Part shown: positions 50,243 through 63,853 of the stretch, piece after piece
How positions within the stretch are numbered: position 1 is the stretch's first letter
How the letters are laid out: each line of letters opens with the position of its first letter
Virus record (IMG/VR): IMGVR_UViG_3300045996_002337
Coordinates: 62,001-126,000 of that record
DNA: 64,000 nt
Direction: 5' to 3' (one strand)
The notes under the pieces: model-generated
Told to the model about the DNA's origin: nothing
Databases searched by the model: none
What the model saw: only the letters and a program-made list of their open reading frames with translations
Program-made: the position numbers and the translations under genes

Positions 50243-50283
50243 GTTGATAGGTAGATTATATCAACCTGACCCAGGTTGTACAC
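50243..50283 (-). promoter_or_regulatory. Early sigma70-like promoter with hairpin
   Basis: GTGTACA-N16-TATAAT; inverted repeat GTTGATA/TATCAAC around the -10. Confidence 0.75.
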
Positions 50284-50970: not shown

Positions 50971-51015
50971 GGTTGGTATGAAGCTATTATACTCAACCTA
51001 TGTTAGCTTGTACAC
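50971..51015 (-). promoter_or_regulatory. Early sigma70-like promoter with hairpin
   Basis: GTGTACA-N17-TATAAT; GGTTGGTAT/ATAC(T)CAACC. Confidence 0.75.
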
Positions 51016-52434: not shown

Positions 52435-52477
52435 GGTCGATGGGTTGATTATACACCCATCGACCTGCGTTGTACAC
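52435..52477 (-). promoter_or_regulatory. Early sigma70-like promoter with perfect 11-bp hairpin
   Basis: GTGTACA-N17-TATAAT; GGTCGATGGGT/ACCCATCGACC flanks the -10. Confidence 0.8.
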
Positions 52478-52483
52478 TACTTC

Positions 52484-53962
52484 TTAGGTGATGTTAGCAA
52501 GCGCAATACGCTTCCACAGCTTCGAGCCGGAGTTCGCAACTTGGATCACGTTCAGCAGGGAGCGGCTCGAGATTTCTGCCGCGATTTCACGGTTGTCGTA
52601 GAGGAACTTGTAAGCTTCTTCCTTGATTTCCATCGAGACACCGGGCGCGAACTTCTCGCTCGGCAGAATTTGACGCATGCGTTCGAAGCGCTCTTCAATC
52701 GTCATCTCGAGGTCTGCACGCAGCGAGCGCGTGATCAGCGGTTGGGGGAAATCTTCGGACTTCACGTTCGAGATGAAGATGACGCGGCCTTCAAACAGGA
52801 AGCTGCGCGGCAGGTCGTCGTTGGCCGAGCCTTCCACGTTCCACGTCACCCAACGCTCGGTGTCGGTGTCGAGGGCGGCCTTCAGCAGGTTTGCCGAGAC
52901 CTCATTCTTCCATGCGGCGTCGCAGTCATCAAACACGACGAGCTTCTTCTTGTTCTCGAACAGCGTACGGAAGAGGCCCTTGGCGCTCGAGTAACCTTTG
53001 ACATAGTGATAGTCACCTGCCAGGTCGGGGGCTTGCTTGACGTTCTCTACGTCCATGGTGTGATATCGGTCGGCAGGGATGCCGAAAACCGACGTCATGA
53101 TCTTGCACCATTCCTTGCCGTGGCCCTGCTTCACCTTAAGGCTCTTGGGGAAGAGCATAAATTGCACGTGGTGGGCAACCTCGTGCGGCACGATGATGTC
53201 GTAGTACTCGCTGGGGTTCGCCATCGCCAGCTTGATGTTGAACTGATACTTGTTGGTACCGGGGAAGAACCGACCGCCACAGGTGCGATCCTCGAGTGAT
53301 TTGGAGGTGTGCAGGCCGGTGAAGTCCACATCACCAAAGACCAGCTCGAGCTCGTCGAGTTCCTCGTCTTCTTCGTCCTCGTCCTCGTCTCGATCGGCCT
53401 TGCTGGTCTTCGGGAGACCATGTTCCTTGTAGTACGCGATCGCTTGGGCACGGCATTCCTTCATGCGACGAAGGATGTTGTCGGCTACGACTTGTTCTTC
53501 CGGTGTGAGGGTGTAGGCAAGCTTCATGGCTTCCTCGGTGGAGAGGAGACCGTGTTCGCGAATCTTTTCCTTCGTGTGGAAGGTCTTACCGAGCGAACCC
53601 TCACCGGTGATGATCAGCGATCGAATGCCGATGTTGCGGATCACGATATCGACGCACTCGTCGAGCAGCTCGTAACGTTCCTCAACGCTGAGGAGGTTGT
53701 TCGGCTTAACGCGGGGAGCTTGCGGGGTATAGGCGCGCGAGACGCCTTCCGACGTGGGGCTCGGTGCAAAATTGACTGGGCCGAGGTTGGAGAAACCTGT
53801 CACGTTCAGCTTGAGGGCCTTCGAGCACTTGCCCTCGAGAATGCGGGAGATGACATACTGCTTCGACGATTCGCCACCAACTGAACGCACAAGAACTTGG
53901 CCGTCAAATTCGGCAGACCAAGTGTTGGTGTTTTCGTCGTGGCAAAGGGTTGCGAGATTCAT
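52484..53962 (-). CDS. AAA+ ATPase with nested SprT-like zinc metalloprotease domain
   Basis: Walker A GEGSLGKT; HEVAH...GHGKEW; Walker B VVFDDCD; start moved to 53962. Confidence 0.75.
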   Translation of the reverse strand: MNLATLCHDENTNTWSAEFDGQVLVRSVGGESSKQYVISRILEGKCSKALKLNVTGFSNLGPVNFAPSPTSEGVSRAYTPQAPRVKPNNLLSVEERYELLDECVDIVIRNIGIRSLIITGEGSLGKTFHTKEKIREHGLLSTEEAMKLAYTLTPEEQVVADNILRRMKECRAQAIAYYKEHGLPKTSKADRDEDEDEEDEELDELELVFGDVDFTGLHTSKSLEDRTCGGRFFPGTNKYQFNIKLAMANPSEYYDIIVPHEVAHHVQFMLFPKSLKVKQGHGKEWCKIMTSVFGIPADRYHTMDVENVKQAPDLAGDYHYVKGYSSAKGLFRTLFENKKKLVVFDDCDAAWKNEVSANLLKAALDTDTERWVTWNVEGSANDDLPRSFLFEGRVIFISNVKSEDFPQPLITRSLRADLEMTIEERFERMRQILPSEKFAPGVSMEIKEEAYKFLYDNREIAAEISSRSLLNVIQVANSGSKLWKRIALANIT

Positions 53963-53971
53963 TCGGTGATT

Positions 53972-54024
53972 TCCTGCAGTGGAGTTGATAGGATAGATTA
54001 TATCCACTCCATGCAGGATGTACA
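53972..54024 (-). promoter_or_regulatory. Early sigma70-like promoter within a long hairpin
   Basis: TGTACA-N16-TATAAT; stems TCCTGCA/TGCAGGA, TGGAGT/ACTCCA, GGATA/TATCC, loop GATTA. Confidence 0.8.
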
Positions 54025-54047: not shown

Positions 54048-54416
54048 CTAACTTGTTGCGTCGATGGCGGGTGGTTGCGGCAGCGACATCCAGTAGGTCG
54101 GCTCAACGACGCAGCCGTTGATTGCCTCCCAATAAACCAAGTCGTGTTTTTCGTTGCGCCAACCAGCAGAAACTACGCACGCCCCAAGTCCAGGCGCATA
54201 AGCCAAGACCCGCCGCCCATCCCTCGGGGCCGACTCAATCGGAAGCCATCGCTCAGCATCCTTCGCCGCGCTGGCCGCCATGTCATGCAGGCGGTCGATG
54301 GCAGAGTACAGACGTCCCAAGGTTGTGACGCGGGATGTGTCACGGCTACGGGCTTGAAGGTTGTCCGCGTACCGCTTGCAATCTTCTGCCAGCGCTTCCG
54401 CCATTTGGTTTTTCAT
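54048..54416 (-). CDS. Hypothetical protein with DUF551-like C-terminus
   Basis: 'WLPIESAPRDG', 'PTYWMSLPQPP'; start moved to 54416. Confidence 0.6.
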   Translation of the reverse strand: MKNQMAEALAEDCKRYADNLQARSRDTSRVTTLGRLYSAIDRLHDMAASAAKDAERWLPIESAPRDGRRVLAYAPGLGACVVSAGWRNEKHDLVYWEAINGCVVEPTYWMSLPQPPAIDATS

Positions 54417-54904
54417 CAAAATGCCTTGGTGAGGGAGAGCTGCAACGCATTCACACCAGGATTCGGGCGCTTGAACCCAGCGTTGCTGAAATGTGAGGCG
54501 CGAACCCCAACAACGATGGAGGGGCCGTATCGCCACCCCACACCGAGATGGTCAGCGAACTGCCACCGAGTGGTGATGTCCTGCTCAGCGAACGTCGTGT
54601 CCGTAAAGTAGGAGACGCCGATGCCTGCCTCAACGAACCACCGCGGATTCAAGTTGGCCCGCAGCATAGGGACTGCTGACAGCTGTACAGATCCGCCATT
54701 TGGGCCGTGCCAAAAAGACACGCCGACTTCGGGATGCATCATGATCGAGTATTTCCCGAATTCGCTAACGAACTTCGGTTCGAAGAGGCGATTAACCGTT
54801 ACGCGATACGTCCGCTTCTCGCCACCCACTTGGGCTGAATACAGCGTGTCTGCTTGAGCGGAGGTGGCGAGAAGCGCCACCAGGAGGATTGCCGCGCTCT
54901 TCAT
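54416..54904 (-). CDS. pagL: Lipid A 3-O-deacylase PagL
   Basis: Signal peptide, beta-barrel pattern, 'FVEAGIG', 'QFADH', 'HFSNAG..RPNPGVN', terminal Phe. Confidence 0.85.
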   Translation of the reverse strand: MKSAAILLVALLATSAQADTLYSAQVGGEKRTYRVTVNRLFEPKFVSEFGKYSIMMHPEVGVSFWHGPNGGSVQLSAVPMLRANLNPRWFVEAGIGVSYFTDTTFAEQDITTRWQFADHLGVGWRYGPSIVVGVRASHFSNAGFKRPNPGVNALQLSLTKAF

Positions 54905-55104
54905 TACTTGGCCAGAGCAGTTTGAACCTTGCCGAGCAGCGTCTCGAACTTCAGCCGACGAAGGTCCGACTTGGCCCCGACCTTCAGCTTGACGCCGTGG
55001 GCGACGAGCTTATCAAAGTCCTTCGCCTTGCCGGCAAGAACGGAAGCTGCCCAAACGGGGCCGAACGAGAAGCGCTTGCGGGGCTTGGAAACGGTATCAG
55101 TCAT
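54904..55104 (-). CDS. Small basic early protein
   Basis: GGAG SD, first gene after an early promoter. Confidence 0.55.
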   Translation of the reverse strand: MTDTVSKPRKRFSFGPVWAASVLAGKAKDFDKLVAHGVKLKVGAKSDLRRLKFETLLGKVQTALAK

Positions 55105-55146
55105 CTTTTCTCCAAAACAGTTTAGTATGAGTTCATCAAACTTCTG

Positions 55147-55186
55147 ATGATGGTTAGATTATAACCACATTTTGAAAGATGTACAC
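55147..55186 (-). promoter_or_regulatory. Early sigma70-like promoter with hairpin
   Basis: GTGTACA-N16-TATAAT; ATG(A)TGGTTA-GATTA-TAACCACAT. Confidence 0.8.
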
Positions 55187-55416: not shown

Positions 55417-55874
55417 TACCGCACCTTGAGGCGAAGCCAGCTCTCAATTGCTTGACGAACGATTGGCTTGATATCTTCCTTGCTGATAACCACGTCTTCA
55501 GAGATTGAAATTTCCCCATCAAACGTCGGCTCGAATGCACCAGTGGCCACCAAGGCCTCCATCATGTCAATGGTGGCGTGATCAAGCTCGTCATCGTATG
55601 GAACACCTTGGTCAATCGTGTCATGAATCTCCTTGAGAATTTCATCTTGACGATCAACTTTCATAGAGAGCCGCTGAACTTCAGCTTCGAGCTCATCCAC
55701 AGTTTCCATGTACGCAACGAACATGCCGTCAACCTGCGTAATAAGTTCATTGAGTTCCTCACCGGGAGGAACGTGCCCAGTTTCTGAAATTGAGCCTCCA
55801 GAAACTGCATCAAGAATGTCTCGAAGGCGGGCCAACCCGATTTCTTCGTCGCTAACTCTACTTACGATTTCCAT
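55416..55874 (-). CDS. Acidic coiled-coil hypothetical protein
   Basis: AGGAG SD. Confidence 0.55.
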   Translation of the reverse strand: MEIVSRVSDEEIGLARLRDILDAVSGGSISETGHVPPGEELNELITQVDGMFVAYMETVDELEAEVQRLSMKVDRQDEILKEIHDTIDQGVPYDDELDHATIDMMEALVATGAFEPTFDGEISISEDVVISKEDIKPIVRQAIESWLRLKVR

Positions 55875-56319
55875 TATTGTCTCCTTGATAGAACTGTTGG
55901 AAGCACTGCGTCCAATCTTTACGGATGCATTCCTGCGCCTGGGTTATTTCCATCCGCCCTGAACAAACTTCTTTGCGAAGTCGCACCTCTAGGCGGGTCT
56001 TCGAGAAAACATTCCAATCTGCCCCGTATTCATGGGGCCAAAGGTTCCTTGGATCGTTTGAGCCGCCAATGGACAGCGGAATCAAGTGATCAATCTTGCA
56101 ACCTTTATTACACCGCTCTTTATCAACCTTGTGAGCCCTGTAGACTTTATTCTTGATTGATCTGGAGACATTTCGCGCCTTTGCGGGATAGTCTTTGGCG
56201 CACACTAGAACTGTGTCGGTTGACGCAACAAGCCCTGGCGTTAATTCTGGGGATGGGAGATATGGATATGACTGCGCCGTTGTCGCGCAAAAGAGAAGAA
56301 GCCAGATGCCGCTGCGCAT
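55858..56319 (-). CDS. HNH nuclease with signal peptide (probably exported)
   Basis: 'MRSGIWLLLFCATTAQS', 'IDHLIPLSIGGSND..NLWP', several Cys. Confidence 0.7.
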   Translation of the reverse strand: MRSGIWLLLFCATTAQSYPYLPSPELTPGLVASTDTVLVCAKDYPAKARNVSRSIKNKVYRAHKVDKERCNKGCKIDHLIPLSIGGSNDPRNLWPHEYGADWNVFSKTRLEVRLRKEVCSGRMEITQAQECIRKDWTQCFQQFYQGDNNGNRK

Positions 56320-63817: not shown

Positions 63818-63853
63818 GAATGAATTATATCCATAACATCACAGGTTGTACAC
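63807..63853 (-). promoter_or_regulatory. Early sigma70-like promoter with hairpin
   Basis: GTGTACA-N17-TATAAT; GTGATGTT/AACATCAC. Confidence 0.75.

What the first reader, a model, noticed from the sequence alone, without database searches (positions are those of the whole stretch)
54416..55186. Early-expressed PagL lipid A deacylase
Seen: an intact HFSN motif and outer-membrane barrel features, second gene after an early promoter. Known: PagL removes the 3-O-acyl chain of lipid A, altering outer-membrane properties, vesiculation and immune recognition. Inference: a lytic-type phage remodelling LPS, for superinfection exclusion or outer-membrane conditioning.
Basis: partly seen in the sequence, partly recalled or inferred. 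Interest (0 to 1): 0.6.

Follow-up and report, generated by a model that had tools for sequence, protein, structure and literature searches.

The report
Jumbo-phage PagL lipid A deacylase gene
An uncultivated 350-kb phage carries an intact copy of the bacterial outer-membrane enzyme PagL, which strips one fatty acid from lipid A, behind a host-type promoter, so this apparently lytic phage probably remodels the outer membrane of the cell it infects.

Summary
Window 54416-54904 (-) is a 162-aa ORF with a Sec signal peptide, an HFSN motif and a terminal Phe. It matches Pfam PagL (E 1.9e-27, 96.5 bits). Its AF2 model (pLDDT 89.8) superposes on P. aeruginosa PagL 2ERV (TM 0.76/0.84). It is the second gene after a TGTACA-N16-TATAAT promoter. 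That promoter type occurs 26 times exactly in the genome, always on the minus strand (about 0.17 expected).

The genome is a 349,660-bp jumbo phage. Its nearest cultured relative is Ralstonia phage RsoM2USA. No integrase or phage RNA polymerase was found.

The small-gene-plus-PagL pair recurs at the same position in two other related phage contigs. There its GC matches each phage. Two further relatives lack PagL, and one of them carries a GlmU-like pair in the slot. So PagL is long-resident accessory cargo, not contamination.

Its bacterial relatives are Burkholderiales PagLs. The third triad residue (Glu140 in P. aeruginosa) is Asn in all three phage copies, as in OMPLA.

Still unproven: early timing, enzyme activity, and the biological role (superinfection exclusion, vesiculation or outer-membrane conditioning). 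No PagL was found in 50,697 GenBank phage records. A Pseudomonas-type PagL does sit in a temperate IMG/VR phage (phrog_15758, listed as 'unknown function').

The parts
55158..55185 (-). Sigma-70-type promoter of the operon: -35 TGTACA, 16-nt spacer, -10 TATAAT. It belongs to a genome-wide promoter class.
   Evidence: 6 window hits, 0 in the shuffles. (26 exact genome hits, all on the minus strand). (46 or more sites in the PWM scan, all on the minus strand).
54904..55104 (-). First gene of the operon: a 66-aa basic, four-helix cytoplasmic protein of unknown function ('gp66'). A GGAG lies 8 nt before its ATG, and its stop overlaps the PagL start.
   Evidence: 30 metagenomic homologues with no Pfam family. 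A paralogue at genome 19786..19511. AF2 pLDDT 86.9. Only weak SAP/Rho-N-like fold matches, best Z 5.4.
54416..54904 (-). PagL-family outer-membrane lipid A 3-O-deacylase, a 162-aa precursor.
   Evidence: Pfam PF09411 at 96.5 bits. phmmer against 2ERV, E 3.9e-15. AF2 pLDDT 89.8. Foldseek against 2ERV, TM 0.76/0.84, rmsd 2.3.
54851..54904 (-). Predicted Sec signal peptide, residues 1-18: Lys at position 2, a hydrophobic core, and an AQA cleavage motif.
   Evidence: Read from the translation. The AF2 model shows a helix at 3-13, low confidence at 15-17, and the first barrel strand from residue 21.
54482..54493 (-). The HFSN motif: catalytic His138 and Ser140, plus the invariant Asn141.
   Evidence: Aligned to His126 and Ser128 of 2ERV. 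Invariant in alignments A1 and A4.
54449..54451 (-). Asn152, at the position of the third triad residue (Glu140 in P. aeruginosa PagL).
   Evidence: The HMMER alignment to 2ERV. This column is N in all three phage copies, D in P0002, P0003 and B. bronchiseptica, and E in the Pseudomonas type.
54048..54416 (-). Third gene: a DUF551-like ORF of about 122 aa. Its likely start is the ATG at 54416, which overlaps the PagL stop (TGATG). It is absent from the related phages.
   Evidence: Weak DUF551 match (E 0.013). Weak phrog_924 match. No counterpart in L003, L098 or L089.
53997..54024 (-). The next promoter of the same class. It marks the end of the PagL operon and drives the SprT-like gene.
52484..53962 (-). 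Conserved downstream neighbour: a 492-aa protein with a SprT-like zinc-protease motif (HEVAHH) and a phrog_1250 C-terminal part. It anchors the synteny between relatives.
   Evidence: It is 74% identical in L003, 67% in L089, and present in L098 and L099.

Best explanation
The ORF encodes a working member of the PagL family, an eight-stranded outer-membrane beta-barrel serine esterase that removes the 3-O-linked hydroxyacyl chain from lipid A. It sits in a variable cargo slot of a clade of RsoM2USA-like jumbo phages whose hosts are probably Burkholderiales. It is transcribed by host RNA polymerase from a strong sigma-70-type phage promoter, as the second gene of a three-gene, translationally coupled operon. 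That most likely means expression early in infection. The precursor would be exported by Sec and inserted into the outer membrane by the host BAM machinery. There, His138, Ser140 and Asn152, with Asn141 nearby, would deacylate outer-leaflet LPS. From what PagL does in bacteria, the expected result is under-acylated lipid A, more vesicle shedding and a more permeable outer membrane. The benefit to the phage is not known. The likeliest is a change of the infected cell surface during a long latent period, giving exclusion or decoying of other phages, or conditioning of the outer membrane. Shown here: family, fold, catalytic motif, operon layout, promoter class, and conservation at the same position in related phages. 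Inferred: export, activity, timing and benefit.
For: Family and fold: Pfam PagL at 96.5 bits; phmmer against 2ERV at 3.9e-15, with His and Ser aligned; AF2 pLDDT 89.8 with 2ERV as the top PDB match at TM 0.76/0.84.

Conserved residues: H138, S140, N141, G143, K145, P147, N148 and G150 are invariant across the phage, Bordetella and Pseudomonas-type sequences.

Not an artefact: the gp66-PagL-SprT order recurs in L003 (an ENA contig, neighbours 45-84% identical) and in L098 (a Logan contig with the same two promoters). PagL GC follows each resident phage (0.58, 0.44 and 0.54), against 0.69 in the nearest bacterial copy.

Promoter: 26 exact and at least 46 PWM sites, all on the minus strand. No RNAP beta subunit and no T7-type RNAP match in the genome, although the T7-type search was silent in every control genome and so is not informative. 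RsoM2USA also has no annotated RNAP and a 270-min latent period (PMC8504454).

Biology of PagL: expression raises vesiculation in Salmonella without envelope stress, and its His and Ser are essential (PMC4958258). A pagL knockout in B. pseudomallei gives penta-acylated lipid A and lower permeability (PMC13460123).

Relatives: the closest bacterial homologues are Burkholderiales, including B. bronchiseptica.
Against: There is no biochemical, RNA or protein evidence, and no sequencing run could be listed. The third triad residue is Asn rather than the Glu140 of the P. aeruginosa enzyme. This might lower the activity or alter it. However, Asn also occurs in bacterial homologues, and OMPLA uses a His-Ser-Asn triad (bioRxiv 10.1101/191650). 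Two related phages lack PagL altogether (L089 and L099), so it is dispensable. Lipid A lies beneath the sugars that phages usually bind, so a direct receptor-masking effect is not obvious. The 'early' class rests on analogy with other phages that depend on host RNAP.
Confidence: 0.7

Rival explanations
1. The barrel is an active esterase with a different substrate. For example, it could be an OMPLA-like phospholipase, or a deacylase of another outer-leaflet lipid. It would then help weaken the outer membrane at lysis rather than remodel lipid A early.
For: The third triad residue is Asn, as in OMPLA's His142-Ser144-Asn156 triad. All three phage copies share Asn, while the nearest bacterial copies have Asp. 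No spanin genes were looked for or seen near the locus.
Against: The Pfam match is to PagL alone, with a large margin. 2ERV is by far the best structural match. Asn at this position also occurs in bacterial PagL homologues of Verticiella, Pigmentiphaga and Pusillimonas. The gene sits behind the sigma-70-type promoter class and not beside lysis genes. In Salmonella, PagL overexpression gave no envelope stress or lysis (PMC4958258).
Confidence: 0.1
2. The protein acts mainly as a structural outer-membrane barrel, like lambda Lom or the many phage OmpA/OmpX-like barrels. It would mask or alter the cell surface without needing catalysis.
For: Phage-encoded outer-membrane beta-barrels are common in BFVD. 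One related phage (L003) places a lipoprotein and a small membrane protein in the same operon.
Against: The catalytic His, Ser and Asn, and the whole C-terminal active-site block, stay invariant across three phage copies that are only 45-49% identical overall. That pattern argues for selection on catalysis.
Confidence: 0.05
3. The gene is host DNA that entered the contig by misassembly, or a recent neutral pick-up with no role for the phage.
For: The nearest sequence by identity (P0003, 50-55% depending on the alignment) lies on a clearly bacterial Burkholderiales contig. Some relatives lack the gene.
Against: The gene lies in the middle of a 350-kb phage record, inside a phage operon with overlapping stop and start codons. 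The same gene order occurs in two independent assemblies. GC and GC3 are adapted to each phage. The best identity to any bacterial copy is only about 53%.
Confidence: 0.03

Closest known systems
PagL of Pseudomonas aeruginosa (PDB 2ERV), and of Bordetella bronchiseptica, Salmonella and Burkholderia pseudomallei
   Same: Same Pfam family. Same predicted eight-stranded barrel. Same H-x-S-N catalytic block, signal peptide and terminal aromatic residue. About 30% identical to 2ERV and 38-41% to the B. bronchiseptica homologue.
   Different: It is encoded by a phage rather than a chromosome. It sits behind a constitutive-looking phage promoter, not under PhoPQ-type regulation. Asn replaces the Glu or Asp third triad residue. 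The mature protein is slightly shorter (about 144 aa).
phrog_15758: a Pseudomonas-type PagL carried by temperate phages or prophages (for example L008, a 58.8-kb IMG/VR phage)
   Same: A PagL-family gene inside a phage genome. The window protein hits this PHROG at 1.6e-18, and the L008 copy hits it at 4.8e-96.
   Different: L008 is a lambdoid temperate phage with an integrase, O/DnaC-like replication genes and a terminase. Its PagL sits in a moron-like position, fitting lysogenic conversion. The two are only 32-36% identical and lie in a different PagL clade. The PHROG is annotated 'unknown function'.
Lambda Lom and other phage-encoded outer-membrane beta-barrels (OmpA/OmpX/opacity-like)
   Same: Small barrels encoded by phages and inserted into the host outer membrane. 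Many appear in BFVD.
   Different: They carry no esterase triad. The BFVD matches are weak (TM 0.63 or less, identity 16% or less, high rmsd). Their function is adhesion or unknown, not lipid A chemistry.
OMPLA (PldA), the outer-membrane phospholipase A
   Same: An outer-membrane barrel serine hydrolase with an H-x-S-N motif and a His-Ser-Asn triad, which is the residue pattern found here (the motif itself is from my own knowledge).
   Different: OMPLA is a 12-stranded, calcium- and dimerisation-dependent enzyme. There was no sequence or fold match to it here.
Phage LPS-modifying and superinfection-exclusion functions: O-antigen acetyl- and glucosyltransferases of temperate phages, and the T5 Llp lipoprotein (from my own knowledge)
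   Same: Phage genes that change the infected or lysogenised cell surface. T5 Llp is also made early by a lytic phage.
   Different: They act on O-antigen or on a protein receptor, not on lipid A acyl chains. They have no sequence relationship to PagL.

Membership tests
PagL (Pfam PF09411, lipid A 3-O-deacylase) | The sequence matches the family model above the curated threshold. | tested here: met
   96.5 bits against a cut-off of 23, E 1.9e-27, covering profile positions 22-133 of 136. The six-frame genome search gave the same result.
PagL (Pfam PF09411, lipid A 3-O-deacylase) | An eight-stranded antiparallel outer-membrane beta-barrel like 2ERV. | tested here: met
   This is a predicted structure only. 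AF2 pLDDT 89.8, pTM 0.78. Foldseek top hits are 2erv_B and 2erv_A at TM 0.76-0.77/0.83-0.84, rmsd 2.3-2.4 over 148-150 columns. The next hits are generic small barrels.
PagL (Pfam PF09411, lipid A 3-O-deacylase) | Catalytic His and Ser in an H-x-S-N block (His126/Ser128 in P. aeruginosa; His163/Ser165 in Salmonella, shown to be essential). | tested here: met
   H138, S140 and N141 align with the 2ERV residues. They are invariant in A1, A2 and A4. Essentiality is taken from PMC4958258.
PagL (Pfam PF09411, lipid A 3-O-deacylase) | An acidic third triad residue (Glu140 in P. aeruginosa; the residue number is from my memory of Rutten et al. 2006, a paper not held in the library). | tested here: not met
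   Asn152 aligns with that position. The column is naturally variable among family members (N, D, E, and also T or G). So this is not a strict family-defining feature, but it does differ from the solved enzyme.
PagL (Pfam PF09411, lipid A 3-O-deacylase) | Export signals of an outer-membrane protein: a cleavable Sec signal peptide and a C-terminal aromatic residue. | tested here: met
   By reading the sequence: a Lys-containing n-region, a hydrophobic core, an AQA motif before residue 19, and a terminal Phe. The model supports this. No dedicated predictor was available.
PagL (Pfam PF09411, lipid A 3-O-deacylase) | Removes the 3-O-acyl chain of lipid A. | not testable with these tools
   This needs expression followed by lipid A mass spectrometry.
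Host-RNAP-dependent (early-type) phage promoter | A sigma-70-like -35 and -10 at correct spacing, recurrent in the genome, in a phage with no RNA polymerase of its own. | tested here: met
   TGTACA-N16/17-TATAAT: 26 exact and at least 46 PWM sites, all on the minus strand. No match to PF00562. No match to PF00940 either, but that search was silent in every control genome, so it is uninformative. Only a weak sigma-like ORF was found.
Host-RNAP-dependent (early-type) phage promoter | Transcripts appear early in infection. | not testable with these tools
   No sequencing run was listed, and the phage is uncultivated.
Accessory (moron-like) phage cargo gene | Present or absent among close relatives at a fixed position, with its own promoter. 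| tested here: met
   Present in the window, L003 and L098. Absent from L089, both at the slot and anywhere in the 257 kb held. Replaced in L099 by a nucleotidyltransferase plus hexapeptide-transferase pair.

The most novel reading that the evidence does not exclude
A clade of virulent jumbo phages uses an early-made lipid A deacylase to re-engineer the infected cell's outer membrane at the level of lipid A itself. This would trigger vesicle shedding or surface change that excludes or decoys competing phages during a latent period lasting hours. It would be the first lipid-A-level LPS remodelling assigned to a lytic phage. The neighbouring variable slot (PagL, a lipoprotein, a GlmU-like pair) would be a dedicated envelope-remodelling cargo site.
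Probability: 0.3. Interest if true: 0.7.

Novelty: new member of a known kind. Interest (0 to 1): 0.5.

Why it matters
PagL is known as a chromosomal, stress-regulated enzyme that bacteria use to tune lipid A, and with it immune recognition, vesiculation and permeability.

Finding an intact copy that is adapted to the phage, and kept behind a host-type promoter in several related jumbo phages, suggests that lytic phages can also act on the lipid anchor of LPS. The known phage examples act on O-antigen or on protein receptors.

If the protein is active, it would be a compact, self-exporting tool for lipid A under-acylation. It would also offer a new handle on how phages with very long latent periods protect or prepare the infected cell.

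The finding also gives a function to PHROG 15758, which is currently 'unknown function'. And it points to Burkholderiales as the likely host group of this uncultivated phage clade.

Tried and rejected
**Searches that found nothing**
- Megablast of the locus, and tblastn of the PagL against 50,697 GenBank phage records, gave no match even at E up to 5. The Pseudomonas-type phage PagL also gave none. I cannot rule out that records near this genome are withheld from that collection.
- NCBIfam had no model hit.
- Four literature searches for a phage-encoded PagL or lipid A deacylase found nothing relevant. Most 'PagL plus prophage' hits were author names or unrelated. The EHEC LpxR paper mentions only phage-encoded regulators.
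- The Rutten et al. 2006 structure paper could not be fetched. No held paper states the Glu140 residue.
- Sequencing runs: none was listed.

**Analyses that stayed inconclusive**
- A T4-type late promoter (TATAAATA) is only weakly enriched, so I could not define a late class.
- My crude gene caller lost the small genes, so the per-promoter operon table is unreliable. I did not use it.
- The 5' leader of the operon has no unusual RNA structure (z = 0.04).
- Phylogeny: with 72 rows, the window copy groups with P0002 and P0003, and then with the L003 phage copy (starred). With 40 rows plus L098, the backbone collapses. So one phage origin, or transfer in either direction, cannot be decided. I did not run the AU test.
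- gp66: no Pfam family, no Atlas lead, and no Foldseek match. There are only weak SAP/Rho-N-like VIA rows with Z 5.4 or less, below the tool's own noise guidance for helical proteins.

**Tools deliberately not used**
- I did not use the large representative protein search, because the family assignment was already clear.
- I did not run complex prediction, because I do not claim that gp66 binds PagL.

Full report
**What is at the coordinates**

On the minus strand, window 54416..54904 is a 162-aa ORF. Its N-terminus reads as a Sec signal peptide: a Lys at position 2, a hydrophobic core, and an AQA motif before residue 19. Residues 138-141 are H-F-S-N, encoded at 54482-54493. The last residue is Phe.

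Directly upstream is a 66-aa ORF (55104..54904), called 'gp66' here. Its TAA stop overlaps the PagL ATG. A GGAG lies 8 nt before the gp66 start. About 50 nt further upstream is a sigma-70-like site: TGTACA at 55185-55180, a 16-nt spacer, and TATAAT at 55163-55158.

Downstream, the PagL TGA overlaps an ATG at 54416. This opens a DUF551-like ORF of about 122 aa that ends at 54048. A second promoter of the same kind follows at 54024-53997. It drives a 492-aa SprT-like protein.

**What the protein is**

- Pfam gives PagL (PF09411) at 96.5 bits, E 1.9e-27, against a cut-off of 23. Nothing else comes close.
- phmmer against the PDB finds only 2ERV, the P. aeruginosa PagL, at E 3.9e-15. The HFSN block aligns to the block holding His126 and Ser128.
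- An AlphaFold2 model built on 11 homologues has mean pLDDT 89.8. It shows a signal helix followed by a barrel.
- Foldseek puts 2ERV first, at TM 0.76/0.84 and rmsd 2.3 Å over 148 columns. Generic eight-stranded barrels follow well behind.

One point differs from the solved enzyme. Glu140 is the third triad residue in P. aeruginosa PagL; that number is from my memory of Rutten et al. 2006, which I could not fetch. It aligns with Asn152 here.

This column varies naturally in the family. It is Asn in several Alcaligenaceae homologues, Asp in B. bronchiseptica and in the closest bacterial copies, and Glu in the Pseudomonas type. OMPLA, the other outer-membrane serine esterase, uses His-Ser-Asn. 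I therefore expect activity, but this is the one defining feature that is not met literally.

**What genome this is**

The window is bases 62001-126000 of a 349,660-bp IMG/VR virus record, estimated 97% complete, with 51% GC. The window also holds virion proteins, a family-B DNA polymerase, a DnaB-type helicase and a peptidase/endolysin.

By DNA polymerase, the nearest cultured phage is Ralstonia phage RsoM2USA (47% identity, 343.8 kb). Next come Xanthomonas XacN1 and Xoo-sp13, then Stenotrophomonas jumbo phages.

I found no tyrosine integrase and no multisubunit RNAP beta subunit. The T7-type RNAP search also found nothing, but it was silent in every control genome, so it is uninformative. 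There is only one weak sigma-like ORF. RsoM2USA likewise has no annotated RNAP and has a 270-min latent period (PMC8504454). 'Lytic-type' is thus reasonable.

**The promoter**

TGTACA-N16/17-TATAAT occurs 6 times in the window, against 0 in 100 shuffles. It occurs 26 times in the genome, where about 0.17 is expected, and every copy is on the minus strand.

A PWM built from these sites finds at least 46, again all on the minus strand. The extended consensus has an A-rich upstream region, GTGTACA, CAGGTTG before the -10, and CATCTATCAAC after it.

A different motif, GTTACAAT without the TGTACA -35, is about four-fold enriched on the same strand. It precedes the helicase operon and a gene beside the polymerase.

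So the PagL operon belongs to the class with a full host-type -35/-10. In phages that depend on host RNAP, that class is usually the early one. This is analogy, not measurement, because no sequencing run could be listed.

**Is the gene really the phage's?**

Yes, on three lines of evidence.

- *Synteny in L003.* A 31.7-kb ENA contig (L003) is collinear with window 61701 down to 42948. The shared genes run from RNA ligase through ClpP, PhoH, the 549-aa protein, the HNH-like ORF, a gp66 homologue (62%) and PagL (48%) to the SprT-like gene (74%) and beyond.
- *Synteny in L098.* A 9.2-kb Logan contig (L098) shows promoter, gp66 homologue (73%), PagL (155 aa, with overlapping stop and start), a 70-aa ORF, promoter, and the SprT-like gene.
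- *Base composition.* PagL GC follows each phage: 0.58 here, 0.44 in the 40%-GC L003, and 0.54 in L098. The nearest bacterial copy has 0.69.

At the same time the gene is dispensable. L089, a 257-kb IMG/VR relative whose SprT-like gene is 67% identical, has neither gp66 nor PagL at the slot, nor anywhere in the record. L099 keeps the gp66 homologue. In place of PagL it carries a nucleotidyltransferase plus a hexapeptide acyltransferase, a split GlmU-like pair.

In L003 the operon also contains a DUF7248 membrane protein and a 97-aa lipoprotein with an LAGC lipobox. The slot therefore behaves as a variable cargo site that tends to hold envelope-related genes.

**Where the gene came from**

Word-based and pattern-based searches give relatives almost entirely from Burkholderiales. 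These include Verticiella, Pigmentiphaga, Achromobacter, Bordetella (among them B. bronchiseptica, 41%), Pusillimonas, Curvibacter and Cupriavidus.

In a 72-row tree, the window copy groups with P0002 and P0003 (99/87). That group then joins the L003 phage copy (98/91), inside an Alcaligenaceae/Comamonadaceae clade (99/90). P0003 lies on a 100-kb bacterial contig. Its MetRS is about 70% identical to those of Caldimonas, Piscinibacter and Methylibium.

With L098 added and fewer rows, the backbone is unresolved. One origin for the phage copies is neither shown nor excluded. Together with the RsoM2USA affinity, this points to a Burkholderiales host group. The 40-52% GC range of the phages warns that the exact hosts differ.

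**How it most likely works**

The chain of events I propose is:
1. Host RNAP transcribes the operon. *Shown:* the promoter type.
2. PagL is translated by coupling to gp66. *Shown:* the overlapping codons.
3. PagL is exported and assembled into the outer membrane. *Inferred* from the signal peptide, the barrel and the terminal Phe.
4. It hydrolyses the 3-O-acyl ester of lipid A. *Inferred* from family membership.

In bacteria, PagL expression increases vesicle shedding without envelope stress, and it needs the His and Ser (PMC4958258). Loss of pagL in B. pseudomallei leaves penta-acylated lipid A and lowers permeability (PMC13460123).

For a phage with a latent period of hours, plausible pay-offs are shedding or altering surface material so that other phages are excluded or decoyed, or making the outer membrane leakier or easier to break. 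I cannot rank these with confidence. A direct receptor effect is not obvious, because lipid A is buried.

**Comparison with what is known**

The enzyme family is well known. A Pseudomonas-type PagL already sits in PHROG 15758, labelled 'unknown function'. It also sits in a complete 58.8-kb temperate IMG/VR phage, between the replication genes and the terminase, in a moron-like position.

I found no PagL of either type in 50,697 GenBank phage records. BFVD has no close structural match, although generic phage outer-membrane barrels are common there. I also found no paper on a phage-encoded PagL.

I therefore rate this a new member of a known kind, in an unreported setting: a virulent-type jumbo phage with a host-type, probably early, promoter. 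Interest is moderate.

**Limits**

There is no expression or activity data. The signal peptide was judged by eye. The Glu140 numbering is from memory. The pattern-based genome scan favours sequences that resemble the query clade. Records close to this genome may be hidden in some collections.

Noticed in passing
window 50255-50282, 50986-51014, 52448-52476, 53997-54024, 55158-55185, 63824-63852 (all on the minus strand); genome-wide: A strong phage promoter class, TGTACA-N16/17-TATAAT, with an extended consensus: an A-rich upstream region, CAGGTTG before the -10, and CATCTATCAAC after it. There are 26 exact and at least 46 PWM sites, every one on the minus strand.
   Followed up: yes
window 31225, 32191, 38404, 47481 (minus strand) and 15 other genome sites: GTTACAAT is about four-fold enriched on the minus strand (19 hits against about 4.8 expected). 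It sits just upstream of the helicase operon and of a gene beside the DNA polymerase, without the TGTACA -35. It is a candidate second (middle?) promoter class.
   Followed up: partly
window 55858-56319 (-): A 153-aa ORF with an apparent signal peptide and a weak HNH-nuclease motif (Pfam HNH_5, E 1.9e-4, below the cut-off). It is conserved at 63-68% in L003 and L099. It may be an exported nuclease-like protein in the operon just upstream of the PagL operon.
   Followed up: partly
window 54904-55104 (-); paralogue at genome 19511-19786 (-), outside the window: The 66-aa first gene belongs to a family of small basic four-helix proteins found only in metagenomic phage contigs (30 homologues, no Pfam). 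A longer paralogue is the first gene after the strongest promoter of the genome. Fold matches to SAP/Rho-N-like domains are weak (Z 5.4).
   Followed up: partly
L003:7148-7366 and L003:7651-7944: In the related phage, the PagL operon also encodes a DUF7248 membrane protein and a 97-aa lipoprotein (lipobox LAGC) that the gene caller missed. The cassette there holds three envelope-targeted proteins.
   Followed up: partly
L099:3281-4991: In another relative, the slot after the gp66 homologue holds a nucleotidyltransferase (245 aa) and a hexapeptide-repeat acyltransferase (295 aa). This is a split GlmU-like pair in place of PagL, and it is another envelope-precursor function.
   Followed up: partly
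L008:5788-6300 (IMG/VR 58.8-kb record): A complete temperate lambdoid-type phage carries a Pseudomonas-type PagL (phrog_15758, E 4.8e-96) between its replication genes and its terminase. This gives a function to a PHROG currently labelled 'unknown function'.
   Followed up: yes
window 52484-53962 (-): A 492-aa protein with an SprT-like HEVAHH zinc-protease motif, an acidic Asp/Glu run, and a C-terminal part matching phrog_1250. It is highly conserved (67-88%) in all relatives and has its own promoter. Its function is unknown.
   Followed up: no
genome 200102, 200198, 250824, 251040, 251229 (minus strand; outside the window): Several promoters of the same class are followed by a near-identical CATCGGTTAAACAAAC... 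leader and lie in tandem about 100-200 nt apart. They are possibly small RNA genes or repeated leader units.
   Followed up: no
genome 46356-46544 (-), outside the window: The only sigma-factor-like signal in the genome: a weak Sigma70_r2 match (18.6 bits, below the cut-off) in a 245-aa frame. It could be a phage sigma factor for later genes.
   Followed up: no
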